Part shown: one piece after another, positions 13,799-22,934 of the stretch | How the letters are laid out: each line of letters begins with the position of its first letter | Position numbering within the stretch: position 1 is the first letter of the stretch | Virus record (IMG/VR): IMGVR_UViG_3300027759_004177 | Coordinates: 1-64,000 of that record | Direction: 5' to 3' (one strand) | DNA length: 64,000 nt | The notes under the pieces: generated by a model | Told to the model about the DNA's origin: nothing | Database searches by the model: none | Seen by the model: only the letters and a program-made list of their open reading frames with translations | Made by a program: the position numbers and the translations under genes

Positions 13799-14745
13799 TG
13801 GTCTCGTCTTTTTATTTCGCCTAATACCTGATGTGCTTTGACCGTTTCCAGTGTGCCAGGCCGTTTGAGTTCGATCCAACTGACTGTGGTTCCTTGACCA
13901 TGTACGTCTTTGATGTAATATACCTCAAAACCCAAACTCTCACACATGGGTATCAACATGCTTTTTGGCATATAACTCATCCAAAAACTTTCTGCATAGT
14001 TGGCACCGTCGACTAAGTCGCCGTTGTTATAACTAAACATAAAAATGCCACCCGGACGTAACAGTCCCTTGACCGATTTTAAATATTCTTTTATAGTATC
14101 GAGACTGCGATAGTTTAGGAAATTCCAACAAAATACAAATCCAAATTGTCCCTGAGGCAATGCATCAAAATTGGTATCTTTGACAAGATATAGTCTTAGT
14201 CTGCGTTGATACTCATCTGGAAACTGACTGACTGTAGATTGTAAAAAATCTCTGTAGTGATCAGTGACATATAACGGATCAGCAGCCACAATGTGTTTGG
14301 TCCACTCACCATCCCGGCATCCAATTTCTAGTGCTGGATATTTCCAATTGGTATTTAATTGTATGCGATTATGAATTTCTGTTTGTAAAGATTCAGATAA
14401 CTCCATCACCCGTAATTTTCGTATGTTGCTCACTGCCTCTTCTTCGACACGCAATTCTAATTCGTAGTTATTGGTAAACAAGTGAGCCGCTTCCACGTGT
14501 ATCTGTTGATTTATTTTGTCGATGATGAGATCGAATCGAGACTGACTAAATTGTAAATCCTGGTGTAGTCTAGCAAAATCTCCAGTCAATTGATGGATTT
14601 CTGTTTGTACATCTGCCAATGGCGTTTCGTTGGCAATAGCACCAATGCGATTTTCTAAACTGTTAATACCCAAGGTAATGTCGTGAGTCGTGTACTCTGA
14701 TTTTAACAGCTCTCGGATTCGAACAAGTTCAGTTAATTTTTTCAT
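13795..14745 (-). CDS. class I SAM-dependent methyltransferase with N-terminal coiled coil
   Basis: ALEIGCRDG motif I; FGFVF; LLRPGGIFMF. Confidence 0.75.
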   Translation of the reverse strand: MKKLTELVRIRELLKSEYTTHDITLGINSLENRIGAIANETPLADVQTEIHQLTGDFARLHQDLQFSQSRFDLIIDKINQQIHVEAAHLFTNNYELELRVEEEAVSNIRKLRVMELSESLQTEIHNRIQLNTNWKYPALEIGCRDGEWTKHIVAADPLYVTDHYRDFLQSTVSQFPDEYQRRLRLYLVKDTNFDALPQGQFGFVFCWNFLNYRSLDTIKEYLKSVKGLLRPGGIFMFSYNNGDLVDGANYAESFWMSYMPKSMLIPMCESLGFEVYYIKDVHGQGTTVSWIELKRPGTLETVKAHQVLGEIKRRDH

Positions 14746-17405
14746 TATTCAAAACTAAACAAATCATCAAAGGTTGTTTTAATATCTGTTGATTCAGCAA
14801 TACGCCACTCTAGCACACCCAACAAGTTCTCTACCTTTTGATCCACAATGGTTGATTCCATTGTGCTATCATCGAATGGCAAGTCTTTGAACCACTGCGG
14901 TATATGAGTTTCGTCTGTGGGATAGCCCACAGACGTATATCCCACTGGATTGTCTTTGAGTTTACACACGATGGTTTTCATACCGTCTACGATGGTTGTT
15001 GAATAGTTGTCGCCATGCATACGCTTTAGGTTGTTCCAGTTCATTGCGGCTCTAACGTGTCCGGGCATGTTGGCTTTGCCCAGACGTGCTTCTTCTGCTG
15101 CATACTTGGTCAAGTTGTTCACACGCTTGGGCGTGCCTTTTTCCCAGGCTGGTCTGGTAGCAAACAATAACTTGAATTCTTTGACTTTTTCAATAACAGC
15201 TTCTCGGCCGGCACCTGTTAACACATCCATGAGTAGCTCACTCAAGAAGTCTTGTACTACCTTGGGTGTATCTGATCGCTTGAGATCCAAGCCCATGGCC
15301 TTCATCTTGCCTGGCTTGCCGTGTGTGTCTAGTCGCACACCTTCCATGTCAAAGATCAACACGCCATAACGTTTCTTTTTGATAAACAAGCCCTTACTTG
15401 CAATAAGTTCACGACCGGCTGCAATAATGGCACCCATCTCTCTAGGACAATGACAAGCACGTTCCATGAATGTTGGGAAACTGGCATTTACTGAGTCGGC
15501 AATGGTATCATATAACTGCACACAGATTTCTCTGTTCCATTCCATGCGACCTGCGGCTACTTCCTCTTTGATTTGCGGCCAGGCTGAGAAATAGACCGAG
15601 TCCGTGTCGCCGTAGATGATACTTGCGCCAACGTGGTCATACTGGCCGGTAATAGCTTCATTGACGTGTGCGTCCATGTGCTTTGCAATGATCCGGCCCG
15701 TAAGCGTCGTAGATTGGCCAATCCTTTGATCAAAGAAGCGGCAACCCGGGTTAAGGATCGCCCCGTAAAGTGAGTTAAGGTTAATTTTTTTAACGAGTTG
15801 CCGCTTGTCCCAGAACGCTTGATCTTCCTTAGATGTTGCGGTTTTCTTCTTATCTTGCATTTCCTTACGTTCAGCATACCATCTCTCCAATAGGCCAGGG
15901 ATAATACCCTTGACATCATATTTAAATATTGTGCCATTGGCACTCAAAGTCCATGGCTGACGACTGTCAAATATCAAGCGCCATACATCTGCGGCACTCA
16001 TTACATCCGAACCACCCTGTTCCCAGTCTACAGTAATCTCAGTGCCTGGTTCCATGTTCATCACTGCTTGATACTCTAGGGTACCAAACATGTTTTCCCA
16101 GGCATCAGCAAAGCTCGATCCACTCGCCAGCTTTTCTTGGATGTAGTGGTCGGTCATTACAGTTCTTAACTGACCAACGACCGTTTCTGGTCCCATGTTA
16201 AGAGCACGGATCGCTGACGGGTAGAGACTGTTAAGGTCGATCGCTCCGATGTATTCGTGCATACCTTTTTTGGGGTAAGCAACGTAGGCACCTGCCGCTT
16301 GTGTGTCACCTTGATCATCTCTGCTTCTCCTGTTAGGTACTACTAGCCCACGGCTGTGAGCCTCATTGATAATGGCTTGTTCGGTAACTGCCACAGCACC
16401 CATGGTGGTTTGCAGTAGCACAGTATTGTCATGTGCTAGTTCATTAGCCAAGTCTAAGAAGCGTAGTTTCTTATCTAACTTGGCAAGAATCATTGTGTCT
16501 TGGCGATTGTAGTCAATGAACTTGGGAAAGTCTTTGTTGTACAGTTGATCCAAGGTGCCTTCGTACTGTGTCTTGCGGTCACCCAGTTCGTATTCGGCAA
16601 TGGCATCCAGGCTATAACTGTGACGTTCTTCATAAGTGTATTTGCGATACAGTTGCATGTAGTCTAAGTGAACACGACCCAGCAAGTCAAAGGTCAAGTT
16701 CTCTGCACCAAAGCGTTCAAACACACGTTGCTTGGGCAGTTGCCCCCACAAGCATAGTCTACGTGTGTCGTCCTTGCTGAGAACTCTAGTGATACGCATT
16801 GTGGTATAAGGAATATCGAAGCCCTCACTGTTCCATCCCGACAAGATATCTGCATCTTCAATCAGGTCAAGGAATGTGTTGAGCATGTCCTCTTCTCGTT
16901 CAAACAAAAAACAGTTGTCATATTGAGCACAAATTTCTTCAGCAGTTTGCCAACTGTAACTCTTGGGCGGAACCACCAGCGTGACCATTTTGTCCATCCA
17001 GTCCATGTAGACTGAGACAGCAGTGATAGCGTTAAAGGGATCTTCAGGTTTTGAATAGCCTCTAAGTGGATCAAAGTCCACCTCAATGTCAAAAAAGGCT
17101 GTTTGTAGTTTTGGCGAGTCTACGCCTAGATAATTTTCTTCAAGACAACGGAAGATGGGATTGATATCTGACTCCCATAGTCGCTTGTTACCGTTGATGC
17201 GTTGCTCTTTGTGGAACTCTTTGCCGTTTTTTGTGGCAAAGCGTGTGACAGGCGTGTCAAAGATTGTGCGGAATTTTCCTCTGGGGTCATCGTAGTAGAA
17301 CACATAGTTGGCCGGATACTCAGTATAAATTCGTTCTCCGTTCACACGTTCTACCACGTGTATGCGATCTTTGTCGCGATCAAACAATGCATCTATATAA
17401 CTCAT
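14745..17405 (-). CDS. DNA polymerase family B
   Basis: Exonuclease FDIE, WNSEGFDIPY, YNRQD; polymerase DLNSLYPS, KINLNSLYG, YGDTDS. Confidence 0.97.
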   Translation of the reverse strand: MSYIDALFDRDKDRIHVVERVNGERIYTEYPANYVFYYDDPRGKFRTIFDTPVTRFATKNGKEFHKEQRINGNKRLWESDINPIFRCLEENYLGVDSPKLQTAFFDIEVDFDPLRGYSKPEDPFNAITAVSVYMDWMDKMVTLVVPPKSYSWQTAEEICAQYDNCFLFEREEDMLNTFLDLIEDADILSGWNSEGFDIPYTTMRITRVLSKDDTRRLCLWGQLPKQRVFERFGAENLTFDLLGRVHLDYMQLYRKYTYEERHSYSLDAIAEYELGDRKTQYEGTLDQLYNKDFPKFIDYNRQDTMILAKLDKKLRFLDLANELAHDNTVLLQTTMGAVAVTEQAIINEAHSRGLVVPNRRSRDDQGDTQAAGAYVAYPKKGMHEYIGAIDLNSLYPSAIRALNMGPETVVGQLRTVMTDHYIQEKLASGSSFADAWENMFGTLEYQAVMNMEPGTEITVDWEQGGSDVMSAADVWRLIFDSRQPWTLSANGTIFKYDVKGIIPGLLERWYAERKEMQDKKKTATSKEDQAFWDKRQLVKKINLNSLYGAILNPGCRFFDQRIGQSTTLTGRIIAKHMDAHVNEAITGQYDHVGASIIYGDTDSVYFSAWPQIKEEVAAGRMEWNREICVQLYDTIADSVNASFPTFMERACHCPREMGAIIAAGRELIASKGLFIKKKRYGVLIFDMEGVRLDTHGKPGKMKAMGLDLKRSDTPKVVQDFLSELLMDVLTGAGREAVIEKVKEFKLLFATRPAWEKGTPKRVNNLTKYAAEEARLGKANMPGHVRAAMNWNNLKRMHGDNYSTTIVDGMKTIVCKLKDNPVGYTSVGYPTDETHIPQWFKDLPFDDSTMESTIVDQKVENLLGVLEWRIAESTDIKTTFDDLFSFE

Positions 17406-17474
17406 AACTCTCCAATGTGTGCCGCTTTGAGCCGACACTTGCTCTACATGCTGATTAAGTCAGCGACTCTGTAT

Positions 17475-17503
17475 ATTATACTATCTTACTTAGCGTTTAG
17501 CAA
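17475..17503 (-). promoter_or_regulatory. sigma70-like promoter for DNA polymerase
   Basis: TTGCTA-17-TATAAT. Confidence 0.6.
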
Positions 17504-18011
17504 GAGCAATATCAAAAGAAATTGCCCGTCGTGTGCCAACAAATTCACATTTTGGAACCGAATGTCTAATATGACTGGGCCATATTAAAAGCATGCCTGC
17601 TGTGGGATTTATGATATGTATTTTGGTATCATTGTGAAACTGTATAGGTCCAGATCCTGTGGGAATTTCTACATAGTAAGTACCGCTGAAATGGCATTCA
17701 TCGTGCTGATGTGGAGCATGACACAACTCAGCAGTCATAGCAAACGGCCAGATGCCAATCAGCACTGACCGTTGGGAAAAATTATTGTATTGTTGTTGTA
17801 AAAATATATTAACGTGGGTGTTGATAAAATTTACAAATGGATTATTTTGATACAGTTGATCAATTTGATCAATGTTGTTGGCATTTCTTAGACCACGTAG
17901 TTCGTTAGTCCAATTTAAATCTGCTGTGCCATTGAACCAAGACTGTGCATAGTTTACAAAATCTTGATCCTGACATTCGTACAACCAGTCATCAAACACC
18001 TGATGCAACAT
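17490..18011 (-). CDS. putative 2OG-Fe(II) oxygenase
   Basis: HQH..FSGTYYV, GMLLIWPSHIRHSV, RRAISFD. Confidence 0.75.
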   Translation of the reverse strand: MLHQVFDDWLYECQDQDFVNYAQSWFNGTADLNWTNELRGLRNANNIDQIDQLYQNNPFVNFINTHVNIFLQQQYNNFSQRSVLIGIWPFAMTAELCHAPHQHDECHFSGTYYVEIPTGSGPIQFHNDTKIHIINPTAGMLLIWPSHIRHSVPKCEFVGTRRAISFDIALAKR

Positions 18012-18316
18012 TAGGTGGTTTTAATAATAAATCTAATCAGTCCAATGGCATCTATAAAAATAAGAAATGCATAATTGGCCAATAGACCAAAACTGCCTCG
18101 TGTCCAGCAGGTCCAAGCTGCCGCTGCACAACCAGCAATAAAAATACTGTATAAGGGAATGACAGGAATTTCTGGAACACTTACAGCAAAGATAATGGCA
18201 CTGACTACACTACAGGCCCAACTAAAAACTTCAGCACAAAAACGCAAAGGCCACTCGTGGTAGTCTTTTTTTATGTAGTCCCAGGTAGCGTAGATCCAGT
18301 CGCCGAACGGAAACAT
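18011..18316 (-). CDS. small membrane protein
   Basis: Three hydrophobic segments. Confidence 0.7.
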   Translation of the reverse strand: MFPFGDWIYATWDYIKKDYHEWPLRFCAEVFSWACSVVSAIIFAVSVPEIPVIPLYSIFIAGCAAAAWTCWTRGSFGLLANYAFLIFIDAIGLIRFIIKTT

Positions 18317-18576
18317 TAAAGTGTTTTACCTACAGTTTCAAGAATTGTGTTTAATTCTTCGTGATCGTTGTTGGTTTCACCTAGTTTGGATTTTTGGGCA
18401 ATCTTGATAGCCTTCTTCAAGATAGCTGGTTTGATTTCCATTTCTTCAGCAATAGCTTTTACTGTGTCTGATAGACCGGCATTGAGGTCCTCAATTTCTT
18501 GTAGCACAGCCATACCTTCGTTGATGATTTGGGTTAATTTGGCTTTTTGCTCATTGCTAAACATACGTGTTGACAT
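18316..18576 (-). CDS. putative dsDNA-binding protein (T4 DsbA/GapR-like)
   Basis: Helical EIEDL..GLSDTVKAIAEEMEIKPAILKKAIKIA pattern. Confidence 0.55.
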   Translation of the reverse strand: MSTRMFSNEQKAKLTQIINEGMAVLQEIEDLNAGLSDTVKAIAEEMEIKPAILKKAIKIAQKSKLGETNNDHEELNTILETVGKTL

Positions 18577-18600
18577 TTGAATCTCCTAGTTGAAAAACAT

Positions 18601-18629
18601 ATTATATACTACTTATTTTGATAAAGCAA
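18601..18629 (-). promoter_or_regulatory. sigma70-like promoter
   Basis: TTGCTT-17-TATAAT. Confidence 0.6.
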
Positions 18630-18647
18630 GAGTGTTTTGGAAAAGTT

Positions 18648-18746
18648 GCTCACTTTAAACATACATTCCGGGGCACGACTCCCAAATATGTTAGCCCAGC
18701 AGCCGGGCATACACTAGTAACGCATAACGTCCTAAGGTAGTGTATT
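18648..18746 (-). ncRNA. candidate structured RNA with three adjacent hairpins
   Basis: Stems AUACACUA/UAGUGUAU, GCCCGG/CUGGGC, AACAUA..GGG/CCC..UAUGUU; not terminator-like. Confidence 0.5.
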
Positions 18747-19388
18747 CGGTTTAATTTCTGATTTTTCGTACATGACTGTGTCAGTGTCACCCAGGGCCCA
18801 TTTGGCGTCTGTTTCCACACTCCATCTACGAGTGGCCACACGAAAGTCTGGCTGTTTGAGTTCTCGAGGATTGCTACTGGGTTCTAATATGATTAGTCTG
18901 TTGTTGGGTTGTGCGGCAAACTGTCCGTTATCACAGCGTATGAAATTGTAGCTCTTGTGATCTTCCACATCCTCTGAGAAGCCAGTATCAAGTGTGTTAA
19001 AGTCTGGATGTGCTGAGTCCACAGTAAACATGTATTCGCCTGACATCCAGGCTCCATTCTTGAGTTTGAACTTGCAACGCATACTTTGTAGTTGTGCTTT
19101 TTTGATCACAGTGATATCGTAACTGAGACAGTCCCATAACTGTAGGTAATCCAACGGTAGTGGTTCGCCCTCTATGGGTTTCCAGCAGTAAGCATGTAAC
19201 GGTAACTTGTCATACAAAGCACCATACTGATTGAGATAGCTTTCAATACGGAATGCTTGACCTCTTAAACTTTTAATGCTAACCCACCACACAGGTTCTA
19301 ATTCACCGTGACCTTGCTCAAAATCATACAAAAACTCTCTACGAACAAAACATTTTACAGCGGGTAAGTTAGCTACTATGTGACTCAT
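18732..19388 (-). CDS. hypothetical protein
   Basis: 218 aa ORF, ATGA-coupled. Confidence 0.75.
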   Translation of the reverse strand: MSHIVANLPAVKCFVRREFLYDFEQGHGELEPVWWVSIKSLRGQAFRIESYLNQYGALYDKLPLHAYCWKPIEGEPLPLDYLQLWDCLSYDITVIKKAQLQSMRCKFKLKNGAWMSGEYMFTVDSAHPDFNTLDTGFSEDVEDHKSYNFIRCDNGQFAAQPNNRLIILEPSSNPRELKQPDFRVATRRWSVETDAKWALGDTDTVMYEKSEIKPNTLP

Positions 19389-20161
19389 TCACAGTTCCAA
19401 CGACGTCGTGCCTTGCAAATAGCTTTGTCTGGAGTTTTAGCACACGAAATGTTGTGCATGTTCATTTGACCCTTGCTACGTGAGCAATAGCTCTTACGAC
19501 GTTTTGAGGCTTTGCCGCCCTTCTTTAACTTACTAGGCTTGGTAGTCACAGCAGTCTTTAACTTTGAGCCTGGATTCTCTCTACGATAGGCTTTGACAGC
19601 TTTGCGACTCATACCGTCGGTCTTGTCTTTCTTGTTGGCTTTTTGCCAATCTTCCATTACAGGAGTTGTAGTTGCAAATACGTATAGTTCATCATCAGTT
19701 AAACTTTCTAGGTCTTCCCAGATCACTTCTGCATCTACTGAATTGCGTTCAGCAAGATCGTCGATGATTGATTCAATAAGATCAAATTCTTCATTTACTG
19801 TATCGACTATACCGTTTTCATGTTGACTAATCATATAGTCCATAACATTAACAATCATTCCTTTGGCTTGTGCTATTTTAGCTTGGCACCACTCTGGCAA
19901 ATTTTCATTATCTTGTATGGCTTTTTCTAAATGGGTACTAACTCTTTGAATAGTTTGTAGATCATTTTTAAACATGCCAGCTTCGTCGTTGTATTCTCTA
20001 TCAAAGTTTTCGGCCACACTTTCGGCTGGCACACAGTTGTTGACTCTAACTCCGCCCTTGACCTTGGTCTTGGGGTTGCCAATTTTTTTACCTGTCCAAC
20101 ACTTGGGATCCAAGCGTGTTTTAGTAGCTTTAGCTTCTGTTATAAATTCATTAGATTTCAT
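19385..20161 (-). CDS. modular putative capsid-internal protein
   Basis: N-terminus MKSNEFITE resembles T4 capsid-targeting sequence MKTYQEFIAE; modules CW..NCVP, LPEWCQAKI, basic RRKSYC..KARRRWNC separated by VAE/VNE/VME. Confidence 0.65.
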   Translation of the reverse strand: MKSNEFITEAKATKTRLDPKCWTGKKIGNPKTKVKGGVRVNNCVPAESVAENFDREYNDEAGMFKNDLQTIQRVSTHLEKAIQDNENLPEWCQAKIAQAKGMIVNVMDYMISQHENGIVDTVNEEFDLIESIIDDLAERNSVDAEVIWEDLESLTDDELYVFATTTPVMEDWQKANKKDKTDGMSRKAVKAYRRENPGSKLKTAVTTKPSKLKKGGKASKRRKSYCSRSKGQMNMHNISCAKTPDKAICKARRRWNCE

Positions 20162-21408
20162 TTTTTCTTTCCTGATTTCATGTTGGCACACCAGTGATAC
20201 ATTCGAGCACGTTCACCTGATGCATTCTTTGCTTTTTTACGTAAACTAGTCACACTTCCTGAACAACTGGCACCCGAACGTTTAACACGACCTGGACGAC
20301 TTTTGCCTTTGACCTTACCGTCGGCAAAGTTTTCCGCTATATCTTGCTTGGCTTTGTTTGCTTGAAATATTTTCTGTTCTTCTGGAGTGGGTTTTCTTAA
20401 CAAGTGCAGGTATTGATCTACCGGCAACGGTTTGACTTCTGTAGGAGTGATCTCTTTTACACCTGGGCGAGAATACCATTCAGCATCTGCTGCCCCACGA
20501 ACAAATAATGGTCGTCCTTGTTCATCTTTAGTTGGTAGTATGTGTAGATAGACATTTTCACCGTGTCTGATCTTGCCACCAAAAAATATTAGATGAGGAT
20601 CTTTCTTCCATCCAAAAGTACCAGTATTGGAACCACGCTCGGCCAAACTGTAAGCTATAGCAAAGTTAGGATCATCTGTGGCATAGATAGCATTTTTATT
20701 ACTTTTTTTAGCACCACCTATGTCATGGGCTTGCCTTGGAGTCAGCGGACCATTGATTTCTTGTGTGGAACCATGATACAAAACTTCTGGATATGATTCT
20801 GAACCTTCTGCTATACCCGACTTGGACTCACCGCCGTCACCACCTTCACCGGAACCGCTCCCACCGCCGTAGTAGCCATATCCTGGAAAAAAGTATCCAC
20901 CACCACCACCGCGAGACTTGCGTTTCTTTTTACGGGATTCGGACAGAAATGTGTCAGCAAAGCGTTTGCAAAGTTCTAGTATCTTGGCATTTTTTGTTTC
21001 TATGCTGGTATCAGGATCTTCTTCGGGGTTTTTATAGCCACAGTACACATGTTCAATACCAAAATCATCCAATAGTTGTTGACAATCTTCACCGTAGCGT
21101 TCACGATGGTCTGGAACACGAGCCGTGTTGCAAGGACTCAAGGTAGTCACAACAATACACTCTGGTCCTGGGTTGGGAGTTCTGTCCAAGGCCGCACGCT
21201 CTGCATGTACACGTAGACCATTTTTGGTTGCATGATTGATGCCAAATGTTCTGGTGCCGTCGGGACAGATCACACAAGCCGCTACCATGCCAAAATATTC
21301 AGAATCTTTTTGTTGGCCTGCAAGAACCATCTCGCACAGTTCTGCAAGTATGGCATCTAGTTCTGACTCGGGGTCAAACTGGGCTGTAAGGATTTCTTGG
21401 ATAATCAC
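20158..21408 (-). CDS. modular protein: Zn deaminase + ADP-ribosyltransferase-like domain + basic C-terminal module
   Basis: HAERAAL...TTLSPC...C; YHGS...IYAT...AIAYS...AEWY; GIAE/DIAE linkers. Confidence 0.7.
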   Translation of the reverse strand: MIIQEILTAQFDPESELDAILAELCEMVLAGQQKDSEYFGMVAACVICPDGTRTFGINHATKNGLRVHAERAALDRTPNPGPECIVVTTLSPCNTARVPDHRERYGEDCQQLLDDFGIEHVYCGYKNPEEDPDTSIETKNAKILELCKRFADTFLSESRKKKRKSRGGGGGYFFPGYGYYGGGSGSGEGGDGGESKSGIAEGSESYPEVLYHGSTQEINGPLTPRQAHDIGGAKKSNKNAIYATDDPNFAIAYSLAERGSNTGTFGWKKDPHLIFFGGKIRHGENVYLHILPTKDEQGRPLFVRGAADAEWYSRPGVKEITPTEVKPLPVDQYLHLLRKPTPEEQKIFQANKAKQDIAENFADGKVKGKSRPGRVKRSGASCSGSVTSLRKKAKNASGERARMYHWCANMKSGKKK

Positions 21409-21450: not shown

Positions 21451-22500
21451 TCATTTTGGTTTGTATGTTTGTGCGTCAGGGTCTGGTTTAGAATTTCTAA
21501 TGTCAATCTTGACAGCCGGTGTTGGGTTGATTTTTTTTGTACTGGGAGTTTTGGGTGGAGTATAAGTTTGTTGAACAGCAAGCTCAGCTGGCTTGTTGAC
21601 CTGAATAGCTTCTTCCATTCCAAAATATTCTGGATTGTCACTGGCAAAATCACGCATGATGATACCAGCATTGGCATTGGCTTCATTTTCTTCATCAGTG
21701 CCAGTGTTGCCTGAATTGTCGTCTAATATACCAGCTAAGTTTTGTTTATGATGAGTAAGTTCGTGTGCTAAGGTACGCAACACATCAACAGGATGACGTC
21801 CAGCAGTGACCAAATACAAGCATTTGTTGTCGGCATCGTACGTGCCAAAACTGGTGTTCATTGGCCGGTCCAGTAGTTCTATCTTGGGCAGTTGTTTAAT
21901 ATCTAATTCTTTTTGTAGCCAAGGCAAGAACTTTTTTACAAATTTATTTGTCACGCTTTCGTTGATGCTTTCTCTGTAGACCGATCTGGCACGTTTGATA
22001 TAATTGCCTAACATTTGTACCTTGCGTTGTAAGAACACAAGATATTCGTCCATTTCTTGTTCTGTGGTGGGTGTAGGATAATCTAATTCTATGTCTGCTG
22101 CCAAACCGGGTGGTATGCCCATTCGTGTGCGTTCGGCTCGGTTGACCAATGTTGGTATGGTGTTCTGAACCAGTTCTATGATTTGATCCAATTTGGCACG
22201 TTCACGTTGTAGAGTCTTTAGATCTTTTTGTGTTTTGGGTTGGGCAACAGATGCGGGTTCAGTCATGGATGCCACGGGCGGTGTAGTCTGTGGTTGATTC
22301 AATTGACGTTTGATATCATACAACTGCGACAAGTTTTTGGCGGGTAACCCAAACTTGTGAGTGTCAATGGTTTCATTTTTTTTACGACCAGCACAATGAG
22401 CCCGTTGACTAAATCCTTTTGGATTAGCACAGTTGATAGAGCTTTTGTATTTCCGGCTCCACTTTTCATCTAGGGGCGAAAAAACTTCGTTAATTTTCAT
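21451..22500 (-). CDS. modular protein with zincin metallopeptidase domain
   Basis: RTLAHELTHHKQ and ENEANA; N-terminal MKINEV and KWSRKYK..C..C module. Confidence 0.7.
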   Translation of the reverse strand: MKINEVFSPLDEKWSRKYKSSINCANPKGFSQRAHCAGRKKNETIDTHKFGLPAKNLSQLYDIKRQLNQPQTTPPVASMTEPASVAQPKTQKDLKTLQRERAKLDQIIELVQNTIPTLVNRAERTRMGIPPGLAADIELDYPTPTTEQEMDEYLVFLQRKVQMLGNYIKRARSVYRESINESVTNKFVKKFLPWLQKELDIKQLPKIELLDRPMNTSFGTYDADNKCLYLVTAGRHPVDVLRTLAHELTHHKQNLAGILDDNSGNTGTDEENEANANAGIIMRDFASDNPEYFGMEEAIQVNKPAELAVQQTYTPPKTPSTKKINPTPAVKIDIRNSKPDPDAQTYKPK

Positions 22501-22934
22501 TTTGCTGTGGCACGTAGCATCCAACTATGTTTTCTATGAGCATCCATGCGTTCAGCAAGGAAATTACTGAAACCATGCTCGCCCGCTTGTTCAGCAACAT
22601 CATAAACTCGTTTCAGTAGTTTGACCATGTTGTCGCTATCTTGTAGTAATTCTTGTACCATGGCTTCGGCTGGAAGTATGCTGGTTTCATCTTCTATGCG
22701 GCTCAGCATGTTGAATCTGCTGCTGGAACCTGGTGCATAGGCACCCATAGCACGAATACGTTCAGCGAAGCCGTCTATGTTGCCGTAGACTTCTTCGTAG
22801 ATTTTTCCAAATAGATCATGCAGTTGGCCGAAGTCTGGACCTTCCACGTTCCAATGAAAGTAGTGTGCTTTTAGATAAAAAGTGTATTCGCTGGCAAAGC
22901 CAATCTTGGCCGCTTTGATTAATTGTTCGTTCAT
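22497..22934 (-). CDS. dps: Dps/ferritin-like protein
   Basis: HYFHWNVEGPDFGQLHDLF, DGFAERIR, KHSWML. Confidence 0.92.
   Translation of the reverse strand: MNEQLIKAAKIGFASEYTFYLKAHYFHWNVEGPDFGQLHDLFGKIYEEVYGNIDGFAERIRAMGAYAPGSSSRFNMLSRIEDETSILPAEAMVQELLQDSDNMVKLLKRVYDVAEQAGEHGFSNFLAERMDAHRKHSWMLRATAK

What the first reader, a model, noticed from the sequence alone, without database searches (positions are those of the whole stretch)
18648..18746. Candidate novel structured ncRNA at the end of the internal-protein operon
On the minus strand three hairpins abut with almost no spacers: P1 AUACACUA/UAGUGUAU enclosing CCUUAGG and a small ACG/CGU helix; P2 GCCCGG-CUG-CUGGGC; P3 AACAUA../..UAUGUU enclosing GGG-AGUCGUG-CCC; then a tail AAAGUGAGC. 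Loop-loop GAC/GUC pairing is possible. It is GC-rich among AT-rich intergenics, lacks a U-tail after a stem, contains the upstream gene's UAG and matches no tRNA, riboswitch or ribozyme I recognise.
Basis: partly seen in the sequence, partly recalled or inferred. Interest (0 to 1): 0.7.

Follow-up and report, generated by a model that had tools for sequence, protein, structure and literature searches.

The report
Phage RNA with loops complementary to rRNA
The three hairpins are one copy of a previously unnamed, strongly conserved structured RNA found once per genome in a large group of uncultured freshwater jumbo phages, and its invariant unpaired segments are complementary to highly conserved stretches of bacterial ribosomal RNA, which suggests but does not prove that it acts on the host ribosome.

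Summary
P1, P2 and P3 lie at window 18646-18747 on the minus strand. The single sequence does not fold better than shuffles (z = -0.98). Covariation carries the case instead. Two non-overlapping sets of 97 and 98 distinct homologues keep 94% and 88% of cells paired, against 73% and 64% in shuffles. Their covariation score is 0.47, against 0.11-0.14 in shuffles (0 of 500 shuffles reach it).

There is no Rfam, tRNA or cultured-phage match. All but one of the bacterial-genome hits are chance matches.

The element is single-copy in 6 of 6 large phage records (289-357 kb). It sits after a variable upstream gene, just before the promoter of an 86-aa gene at the head of the DNA-polymerase block.

The invariant parts are the P1 junction CCUUAGG, the P2 tip CGGCUGCUG and the tail AGUGAGC.
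- The junction region is antisense to 23S rRNA 1920-1933, with 11-13 contiguous nucleotides in most members.
- The P2 tip is antisense to 16S 519-527.
- In sister classes the P3 loop is antisense to 23S 1929-1937, 1968-1976 or 1971-1979.

The best reading is an rRNA-pairing RNA (confidence about 0.4). The function is untested. The window's own P3 loop shows no significant rRNA match.

The parts
18646..18747 (-). Whole element as placed by covariance model R1 (102 nt, 102.1 bits)
18738..18745 (-). P1 5' strand (AUACACUA)
   Evidence: All 5 modelled P1 pairs show changes on both sides. Examples: ACACC/GGUGU, CUUCAC/GUGAAG.
18729..18737 (-). J1, the conserved unpaired block CCUUAGGAC in the P1 junction. 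It is a perfect antisense of E. coli 23S 1922-1930. With the preceding CUA the match is 13 nt, to 1921-1933. The stop codon UAG of the upstream ORF (18732-18734) falls inside it, in this genome only.
18717..18729 (-). P1a inner hairpin (CG-UUAUG-CG) plus junction UUAC. It is absent from the 75-80-nt short forms. Its stem covaries. In some members it is nearly the exact antisense of 23S helix 69.
18709..18716 (-). P1 3' strand (UAGUGUAU). It abuts P2 with no linker.
18694..18708 (-). P2: three covarying outer pairs (100% paired, up to 4 pair types) around the invariant CGGCUGCUG (18697-18705). The core is a perfect antisense of 16S 519-527. It can also pair with 23S 1902-1910 through 7 Watson-Crick and 2 G.U pairs.
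18658..18692 (-). P3: covarying outer stem (18687-18692 with 18658-18663), the class-1 apical block GGGAGUCGUGCCC (18671-18683) and the 3' internal loop CGGAAUG (18664-18670).
18648..18656 (-). Conserved single-stranded tail AAAGUGAGC. The core AGUGAGC is kept in all classes, including in a scan where it was not used as an anchor.
18601..18629 (-). Sigma-70-like promoter of the next gene: TTGCTT (18624-18629), a 17-nt spacer, then TATAAT (18601-18606). It is not part of the RNA fold, but it marks the element as the end of the preceding transcription unit.
   Evidence: RNA-library contigs of the 86-aa gene end at 18575-18579.
18316..18576 (-). 86-aa gene (phrog_12534 / phrog_639). It is the conserved downstream neighbour, present in 144 of 205 element loci at a median of 71 nt.
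18732..19388 (-). Upstream 218-aa gene (phrog_3704). This neighbour is variable: 74 other relatives of the gene have no element within 3 kb.

Best explanation
SHOWN. The element is a real, conserved RNA structure and a new family. It is transcribed in the sense of the flanking genes and occurs once per genome in a large group of uncultured freshwater jumbo phages that carry a T4-type DNA polymerase. It sits at the end of the transcription unit that precedes the block of the 86-aa gene and the DNA polymerase.

Three covarying hairpins act as a scaffold that displays invariant unpaired blocks. These blocks are Watson-Crick complementary to highly conserved rRNA segments:
- The P1 junction, with the inner hairpin P1a, matches 23S 1908-1933. 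That is the 3' strand of helix 69 and the junction after it.
- The P2 tip matches 16S 519-527 in the 530 loop. It can also pair with 23S 1902-1910 through two G.U pairs.
- The P3 loop in sister classes matches 23S 1929-1937, 1968-1976 or 1971-1979.

INFERRED. The RNA works by base-pairing with host rRNA, most probably with 23S domain IV (helices 69-71, the intersubunit-bridge region), while that region is not yet folded or is transiently open. It could do this as part of the mRNA 3' end or after processing. The outcome might be interference with 50S maturation or subunit joining, or tethering of ribosomes. That outcome is not known.
For: Structure:
- Set A2 (97 sequences): 93.9% of cells paired against 72.6% in shuffles. 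There are 362 double-change cells against 111. The covariation score is 0.473 against 0.114 (0 of 500 shuffles reach it), and slid controls stay at or below 0.13.
- Set A3 is independent (98 sequences, mostly other classes): 87.6% paired against 63.8%, and a covariation score of 0.474 against 0.138.

Strand:
- The gene-sense strand folds better in 87 of 96 sequences.
- The variable P3 arms alone favour it 68 to 26, p = 1.5e-8, with many G.U pairs.
- P1a carries UUCG-type loops in the gene sense.

Copy number and position: one copy in 6 of 6 records of 289-357 kb, and conserved synteny.

rRNA complementarity, tested against the real E. coli rrnH operon (locus L202):
- Perfect antisense matches of J1 and the P2 core.
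- At least 2 of the 4 blocks matching by chance: p about 0.003.
- The P1 region aligns to the antisense of 23S 1908-1933 with up to 22 of 23 identities. The mean score is 29.4, against 10.4 for shuffles.
- Within 23S 1870-1985 the shuffle p-values are 0.0003 for J1, 0.0026 for P3-loop class 2, 0.0012 for class 4 and 0.0048 for class 5.
- J1 is identical to the 23S antisense over 11-13 contiguous nt in most members. Extension over CUAC (1930-1933) occurs in 58 of 96 class-1 sequences. It occurs in only 12 of 71 class-2 sequences, whose P3 loop already covers 1929-1937.

The same genome carries other genes for translation components: ribosomal protein bS21, a permuted tmRNA and 11 tRNAs.
Against: - There is no functional data of any kind.
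- The complementarity was noticed post hoc.
- The window's own class-1 P3 loop has only a 6-nt match (p = 0.15). Class 3 and the tail are also not significant.
- 8-nt matches somewhere in rRNA are common by chance, in 120 of 170 shuffled P3 regions.
- The classes are clades, so the counts are not independent events.
- The target segments are base-paired or buried in mature ribosomes.
- Some J1 variants would weaken pairing: the A of GGAC can change to C or U, and CCUAGG lacks one U.
- The inner part of the P2 tip may itself be paired (C-G, G.U, G-C) rather than free.
- The phage encodes no RNase III, no RluD-type pseudouridine synthase and no RNA ligase that such a guide could serve.
- RNA-library contigs show the element only at depth 2-3 and joined to its flanks. 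They give no strand information.
Confidence: 0.4

Rival explanations
1. It is a cis-acting element at the end of a transcription unit, or between cistrons. In this reading it is a processing site, an mRNA 3' stabiliser, or an unusual terminator or insulator. A phage or host protein would recognise its invariant loops, and the rRNA complementarity would be incidental or a relic.
For: - The element starts 0-6 nt after the stop codon of whatever gene lies upstream, across 28 gene clusters.
- It is nearly always followed by a promoter for the next gene. This is either sigma-70-like (TTGC...TATAAT) or a T4-late-like ATAAATA 8-12 nt before the ATG.
- It lies on the sense strand of a transcribed region.
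- In some loci the next ATG is only 4-20 nt after the tail.
Against: - Generic terminators or processing sites would occur many times per genome. This element occurs once.
- No U-tract follows a stem. One search reports only one weak terminator-like hit, and it lies inside P3.
- RNA-library contigs of relatives run 44-63 nt past the tail.
- This reading does not explain why three different P3-loop classes each match 23S next to the J1 target.
Confidence: 0.3
2. It works as single-stranded DNA. In this reading it is part of a replication origin or a primosome or primase loading site, with hairpins extruded on the gene-sense strand next to an AT-rich, promoter-bearing spacer.
For: - One copy per genome.
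- It is fixed next to the DNA-polymerase block.
- A 26% GC spacer with a strong promoter follows it.
- The P2 tip contains GCT triplets. From my own knowledge, T4-type primase starts at GTT or GCT.
Against: - There is no GC-skew inflection at 18-19 kb. The extremes are at about 3 and 303 kb.
- The abundant G.U pairs and UUCG-type loops fit RNA better than DNA.
- The rRNA complementarity is left unexplained.
Confidence: 0.08
3. It is a self-cleaving ribozyme of a new class, with the invariant junction, loop and tail nucleotides forming the active site.
For: - Conserved nucleotides concentrate in unpaired regions held by covarying stems.
- From my own knowledge, small ribozymes are common in phage intergenic regions.
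- One RNA-library contig ends inside J1. This is very weak evidence: depth 2.6, and the end could be an assembly break.
Against: - No match to any Rfam ribozyme family.
- The architecture is three hairpins in series, with no closing helix or supported pseudoknot.
- The P3 loop is swapped wholesale between classes, which is unusual for a catalytic core.
Confidence: 0.07
4. The functional RNA is the opposite (window plus) strand. It would be a small RNA that mimics rRNA pieces in the sense orientation (a helix-69-like hairpin, GGUCCUAAGG and the 530-loop sequence) and acts as a decoy for an rRNA-directed protein or toxin. P1 plus a U-run would serve as its terminator.
For: - Plus-strand promoter-like sites lie at 18577-18605 and 18590-18619.
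- On the plus strand P1 is followed by a U-rich run, because the upstream ORFs end in A-rich codons.
- The sense identity to rRNA is as good as the antisense identity of the other strand.
Against: - The plus strand folds worse in 87 of 96 sequences. The G.U pairs of P3 become A.C mismatches.
- All neighbouring genes are on the minus strand.
- In loci where the next ORF starts 4-20 nt after the tail there is no room for a plus-strand promoter.
Confidence: 0.05

Closest known systems
Orphan structured-RNA motifs found by comparative genomics of phage and metagenome sequence (Weinberg et al. 2010, PMC2864571; Fremin et al. 2023, PMC10690425: 8,495 unnamed candidates from IMG/VR)
   Same: A short (75-118 nt) intergenic motif defined by covariation. 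It is known only from uncultured viral contigs and has no assigned function.
   Different: It matches no Rfam 15 family. I could not check whether it is among the unnamed 2023 candidates, because their supplements are not held. The main text of that paper mentions rRNA only in connection with predicting rRNAs using Barrnap, none of which overlapped a candidate.
Eukaryotic and archaeal guide or chaperone RNAs that pair with (pre-)rRNA at several short sites (C/D and H/ACA snoRNAs, U3). Comparison from my own knowledge.
   Same: A structured scaffold presents several short (6-13 nt) single-stranded segments complementary to conserved rRNA. The P1 junction and the P3 loop can cover adjacent rRNA stretches.
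   Different: I saw no C/D or H/ACA boxes by inspection. No partner enzyme is encoded by the phage. No such RNAs are known in bacteria or phages.
Viral translation elements that pair with rRNA (calicivirus TURBS with 18S h26; BYDV-type 3' cap-independent elements). Comparison from my own knowledge.
   Same: It is virus-encoded, lies next to a stop codon or in a 3' region, and has loops complementary to rRNA.
   Different: Those elements pair with small-subunit rRNA of eukaryotes, and TURBS lies upstream of the stop-restart site. Here the main target is 23S domain IV. The next gene usually has its own promoter.
PeSL cassettes (promoter-early plus stem-loop) of T4-type phages (Arbiol et al. 2010). 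Comparison from my own knowledge.
   Same: A stem-loop followed by an early-type promoter, at the border between variable and conserved genes.
   Different: As I recall, PeSLs are multi-copy simple stem-loops. This element is single-copy, has three hairpins and carries invariant loop sequences.
Lambda nut and HK022 put antitermination RNAs. Comparison from my own knowledge.
   Same: One or two copies per genome, placed just after an ORF. They combine a universally conserved block with phage-class-specific hairpin loops.
   Different: There is no boxA or boxB similarity on the sense strand, and no N-like gene was identified. This comparison was not tested beyond inspection.

Membership tests
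Any Rfam 15 family (riboswitches, ribozymes, sRNAs, leaders) | Covariance-model score at or above the family's gathering threshold | tested here: not met
   There is no hit overlapping the element even at E <= 10. No hit reaches gathering score in four loci of other classes.
tRNA / tmRNA | Cloverleaf with an acceptor stem, detectable by ARAGORN | tested here: not met
   ARAGORN finds 0 genes in the window. No helix closes the three hairpins. The phage's own tRNA-Leu(UAG) anticodon loop reads CUUAGAA and the tRNA shows no 6-nt or longer match to J1.
Intrinsic (Rho-independent) terminator | GC-rich hairpin immediately followed by a U-tract | tested here: not met
   The tail AAAGUGAGC separates P3 from any U-run. 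The only scan hit is a weak one inside P3. RNA-library contigs of relatives continue 44-63 nt past the tail.
Riboswitch / cis-regulatory 5' leader | Lies within the 5' UTR of the regulated gene, downstream of its promoter | tested here: not met
   A promoter lies between the element and the next gene in the window and in most loci. The upstream genes are variable.
Known self-cleaving ribozyme classes | Class-specific core and fold; site-specific self-cleavage | tested here: inconclusive
   The Rfam models do not match. Cleavage activity cannot be tested with these tools.
snoRNA-like rRNA guide | Short antisense elements to rRNA | tested here: met
   J1 9-13 nt, P2 core 9 nt, and P3-loop classes 2, 4 and 5 at 8-10 nt.
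snoRNA-like rRNA guide | Box C/D or H/ACA motifs and a partner modification enzyme | tested here: not met
   No such boxes were seen in the alignments. The phage genome has no PseudoU_synth_2 gene.
PeSL cassette of T4-type phages | Many copies per genome flanking hyperplastic-region genes | tested here: not met
   One copy in each of 6 large records.
Structured RNA in general | Base pairs maintained by compensatory changes beyond what relatedness gives | tested here: met
   0 of 500 shuffles reach the observed covariation score, and the slid controls are 4-10 times lower.

The most novel reading that the evidence does not exclude
A jumbo-phage RNA that binds host ribosomal RNA by multi-site base pairing. 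It would clamp 23S domain IV (helices 69-71) and/or the 16S 530 loop through its junction and hairpin loops, and so remodel, block or capture host ribosomes or their assembly intermediates. To my knowledge this would be the first natural trans-acting anti-rRNA RNA described in bacteria or their viruses. Interchangeable P3 loops would retarget neighbouring rRNA stretches.
Probability: 0.35. Interest if true: 0.92.

Novelty: new member of a known kind. Interest (0 to 1): 0.8.

Why it matters
Large phages are known to carry tRNAs, tmRNAs and ribosomal proteins. How they take over translation is still largely open. This element is a very well supported, single-copy RNA gene-like feature found in hundreds of uncultured jumbo-phage contigs. 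Its only invariant nucleotides read as the complement of two of the most conserved functional sites of the ribosome.

If the pairing is real, it would be a new way for a virus to act on the ribosome. It would also be easy to test, because the proposed target sequence is matched exactly in the E. coli rRNA used here. Even if the rRNA link is wrong, the family is a clean new structured RNA. It has modular, swappable loops and marks the start of the replication module.

Tried and rejected
1. The P3 loop changes class without any change in J1, and the A of GGAC is free to vary.
2. Pairing of the tail with J1 (CUUA with UGAG). The GUGCGC variant in L390 and the CCUAGG variants are not compensated.
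3. Mimicry of the tRNA-Leu(UAG) anticodon loop. The junction loop is 9 nt. The phage tRNA-Leu loop reads CUUAGAA, which differs from J1.
4. Homologues in bacteria. Of 112 pattern hits, 111 are chance matches in high-GC genomes. The one true copy (L246) is on a 14.5-kb, 42% GC contig binned in a MAG.
5. Cultured phages. No hit in 50,697 records.
6. Targets inside the phage genome. There are no complementary sites beyond chance.
7. A splint for RNA repair, or a guide for a phage enzyme. The genome has no Rnl1, Rnl2 or RtcB ligase, no RluD-type synthase and no RNase III.
8. The opposite-strand sRNA. It is disfavoured by folding energy and wobble pairs.
9. A replication origin. There is no skew inflection at the element.
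10. Metatranscriptome support. Only assembled contigs were available, at depth 2-3 and without strand or end information.
11. Further short matches: the tail with 23S 1099-1105, and the class-1 loop with 16S 337-342 or 23S 1964-1969. I treat these as chance, because 6-8-nt matches are expected.
12. Literature. Three searches found no description of such an RNA.

Full report
**1. What is in the window**

- P1 pairs 18738-18745 with 18709-18716. It encloses an unpaired CCUUAGGA, a small inner hairpin (P1a) and UUAC.
- P2 is 18694-18708.
- P3 pairs 18687-18692 with 18658-18663. It encloses GGG-AGUCGUG-CCC.
- The tail AAAGUGAGC is 18648-18656.

The element lies between a 218-aa gene (18732-19388) and an 86-aa gene (18316-18576). 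The 218-aa gene matches phrog_3704 and has no Pfam hit. The 86-aa gene has its own sigma-70-like promoter: TTGCTT at 18624-18629, a 17-nt spacer, then TATAAT at 18601-18606.

The window is the first 64 kb of a 356,865-bp IMG/VR phage record. A T4-type DNA polymerase gene lies at 14745-17438. The 'internal-protein operon' label has no support.

**2. Is it more than chance?**

By thermodynamics alone it is not. The MFE is -30.7 kcal/mol with z = -0.98. By comparison with relatives it clearly is.

Relatives of the upstream gene gave four distinct copies, at 90%, 79% and 70% identity. They show compensatory changes in every helix. These gave 96 distinct sequences.

I built a covariance model (R1) and realigned 97 sequences (A2).
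- 93.9% of cells are paired, against 72.6% in shuffles.
- There are 362 double-change cells, against 111.
- The covariation score is 0.473 against 0.114. 0 of 500 shuffles reach it, and slid controls stay at or below 0.13.

A second set came from scans with other anchors. It has 98 distinct sequences, mostly with different P3 loops. It gives 87.6% paired against 63.8%, and a score of 0.474 against 0.138. The pairs that close the P3 loop covary as well.

P2 and P3 are the best supported helices. P1 covaries, but it is aligned less cleanly (65-78% paired).

**3. Strand**

The gene-sense strand folds better in 87 of 96 sequences. The variable P3 arms alone favour it 68 to 26 (p = 1.5e-8), with many G.U pairs. 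P1a carries UUCG-type loops in this sense. All neighbouring genes are on this strand.

**4. Known families**

- Rfam 15 gives nothing at E <= 10, and nothing for other classes.
- ARAGORN finds no tRNA or tmRNA.
- There is no hit in 50,697 cultured-phage records.
- A scan of bacterial genomes gave 112 hits. Of these, 111 are chance matches in high-GC genomes. The one full copy sits on a short 42% GC contig binned in a MAG.
- Three literature searches found no description.
- A 2023 survey lists 8,495 unnamed IMG/VR candidates, which I could not inspect.

**5. Anatomy of the family**

Three blocks are invariant or nearly so:
- the junction core CCU(U)AGG;
- the P2 tip CGGCUGCUG, which was 96 of 96 in a scan where it was not an anchor;
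- the tail core AGUGAGC, which was kept in a scan where it was not an anchor.

P1a is optional, and short forms are 75-80 nt. The P3 apical loop falls into classes:
- class 1, GGAGUCGUGCC (the window's class);
- class 2, AUUCGCUAC(C), the most common in the second scan;
- class 3, CCGGGAAUCC;
- class 4, ACGCCAUUC;
- class 5, UUACGCCA.

**6. Context**

The element is single-copy in this genome and in five other records of 289-354 kb. One of those has terminal repeats.

Of 205 loci, 144 have the 86-aa gene downstream (median 71 nt). 113 have the DNA polymerase within 3 kb.

Upstream genes fall into 28 clusters, each ending 0-6 nt before P1. 74 other relatives of the window's upstream gene lack the element nearby.

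After the tail there is usually a promoter, either sigma-70-like or a T4-late-like ATAAATA close to the ATG. In some loci other genes are inserted there, for example a 508-aa radical-SAM protein in L004 and L009. So the element marks the end of a transcription unit at the head of the replication block.

Metatranscriptome contigs cover the 86-aa gene exactly (18308-18579). Relatives' elements appear in RNA libraries only at depth 2-3 and joined to both flanks. This shows neither a discrete small RNA nor termination.

**7. The clue to function**

I checked the blocks against a real rRNA operon, E. coli rrnH (locus L202).
- CCUUAGGAC is the perfect antisense of 23S 1922-1930. With the CUA that precedes it in the window, the match is 13 nt (1921-1933).
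- CGGCUGCUG is the perfect antisense of 16S 519-527. It can also pair with 23S 1902-1910 through two G.U pairs.
- At least two of the four blocks matching by chance has p of about 0.003.
- The whole P1 region aligns to the antisense of 23S 1908-1933 with up to 22 of 23 identities. The mean score is 29.4, against 10.4 for shuffles (maximum 25).

The P3 loops of three other classes are also antisense to the same neighbourhood of 23S:
- class 2 to 1929-1937;
- class 4 to 1968-1976;
- class 5 to 1971-1979.

Within 1870-1985 the shuffle p-values are 0.0026, 0.0012 and 0.0048.

J1 is identical to the antisense over 11-13 contiguous nt in most members. Its extension over 1930-1933 is frequent in class 1 (58 of 96). 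It is rare in class 2 (12 of 71), where the P3 loop already covers those bases.

**8. Caveats**

- The complementarity was noticed after the fact.
- 8-nt matches somewhere in 4.5 kb of rRNA are expected by chance.
- The classes are clades, so the counts are not independent events.
- The window's own class-1 loop (6 nt, p = 0.15), class 3 and the tail are not significant.
- Some J1 variants would weaken pairing.
- The targets are structured in mature ribosomes.
- The phage has no obvious partner enzyme.
- It does carry bS21, a permuted tmRNA and 11 tRNAs, so it has other genes for translation components.

**9. Verdict**

The existence of a new structured RNA family is, in my judgement, near certain. 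I rate an rRNA-pairing mode of action at about 0.4. A protein-recognised cis element at the end of the transcription unit is at about 0.3. The single-stranded-DNA origin, ribozyme and opposite-strand decoy readings are each below 0.1. None of the functional readings has been tested.

Noticed in passing
own genome G000:C1:71983-72379 (-), outside the window: ARAGORN calls a permuted (two-piece) tmRNA gene with tag peptide ANDEQFALAA. It also tRNA genes at 183.7-202.0 kb.
   Followed up: partly
own genome G000:C1:120879-121037 (-), locus L473: The phage encodes a ribosomal protein bS21 homologue (Pfam PF01165, 61.7 bits).
   Followed up: partly
L004:3785-5311 (+) and the equivalent place in L009: In two close relatives a 508-aa radical-SAM-domain gene sits between the element and the 86-aa gene's promoter. 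The junction falls right after the tail of the element.
   Followed up: partly
window 18316-18576 (-): The 86-aa gene is the only part of 17400-19300 covered by exact contigs in two metatranscriptomes. The contigs end at 18575-18579, near the predicted start site. The family has more than 3,700 members, none with an informative name. There are weak helix-turn-helix-like matches to sigma-70 region 3.
   Followed up: partly
window 18732-18760 (-): In this genome the 218-aa ORF runs six codons further than in L004, L008 and L009. It ends at a UAG inside the conserved junction of the RNA.
   Followed up: yes
loci L316, L327, L332, L333, L344 and others, just after the tail: Many relatives have (N)ATAAATA, which resembles the T4-type late promoter, 8-12 nt before the next ATG. 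It often begins at the last base of the tail.
   Followed up: no
L246 (contig CAZHPL010000057.1, 14,572 bp): A full copy of the element lies on a short 42% GC contig binned in a MAG labelled Lishizhenia. This is probably a mis-binned phage contig, or possibly a hint to the host.
   Followed up: no
window 20158-21408, 21451-22524, 22497-22934 (-): The upstream neighbours include a 416-aa protein with a cytidine/dCMP-deaminase zinc-binding region, a putative metallopeptidase and a ferritin-like (Dps-type) protein.
   Followed up: no
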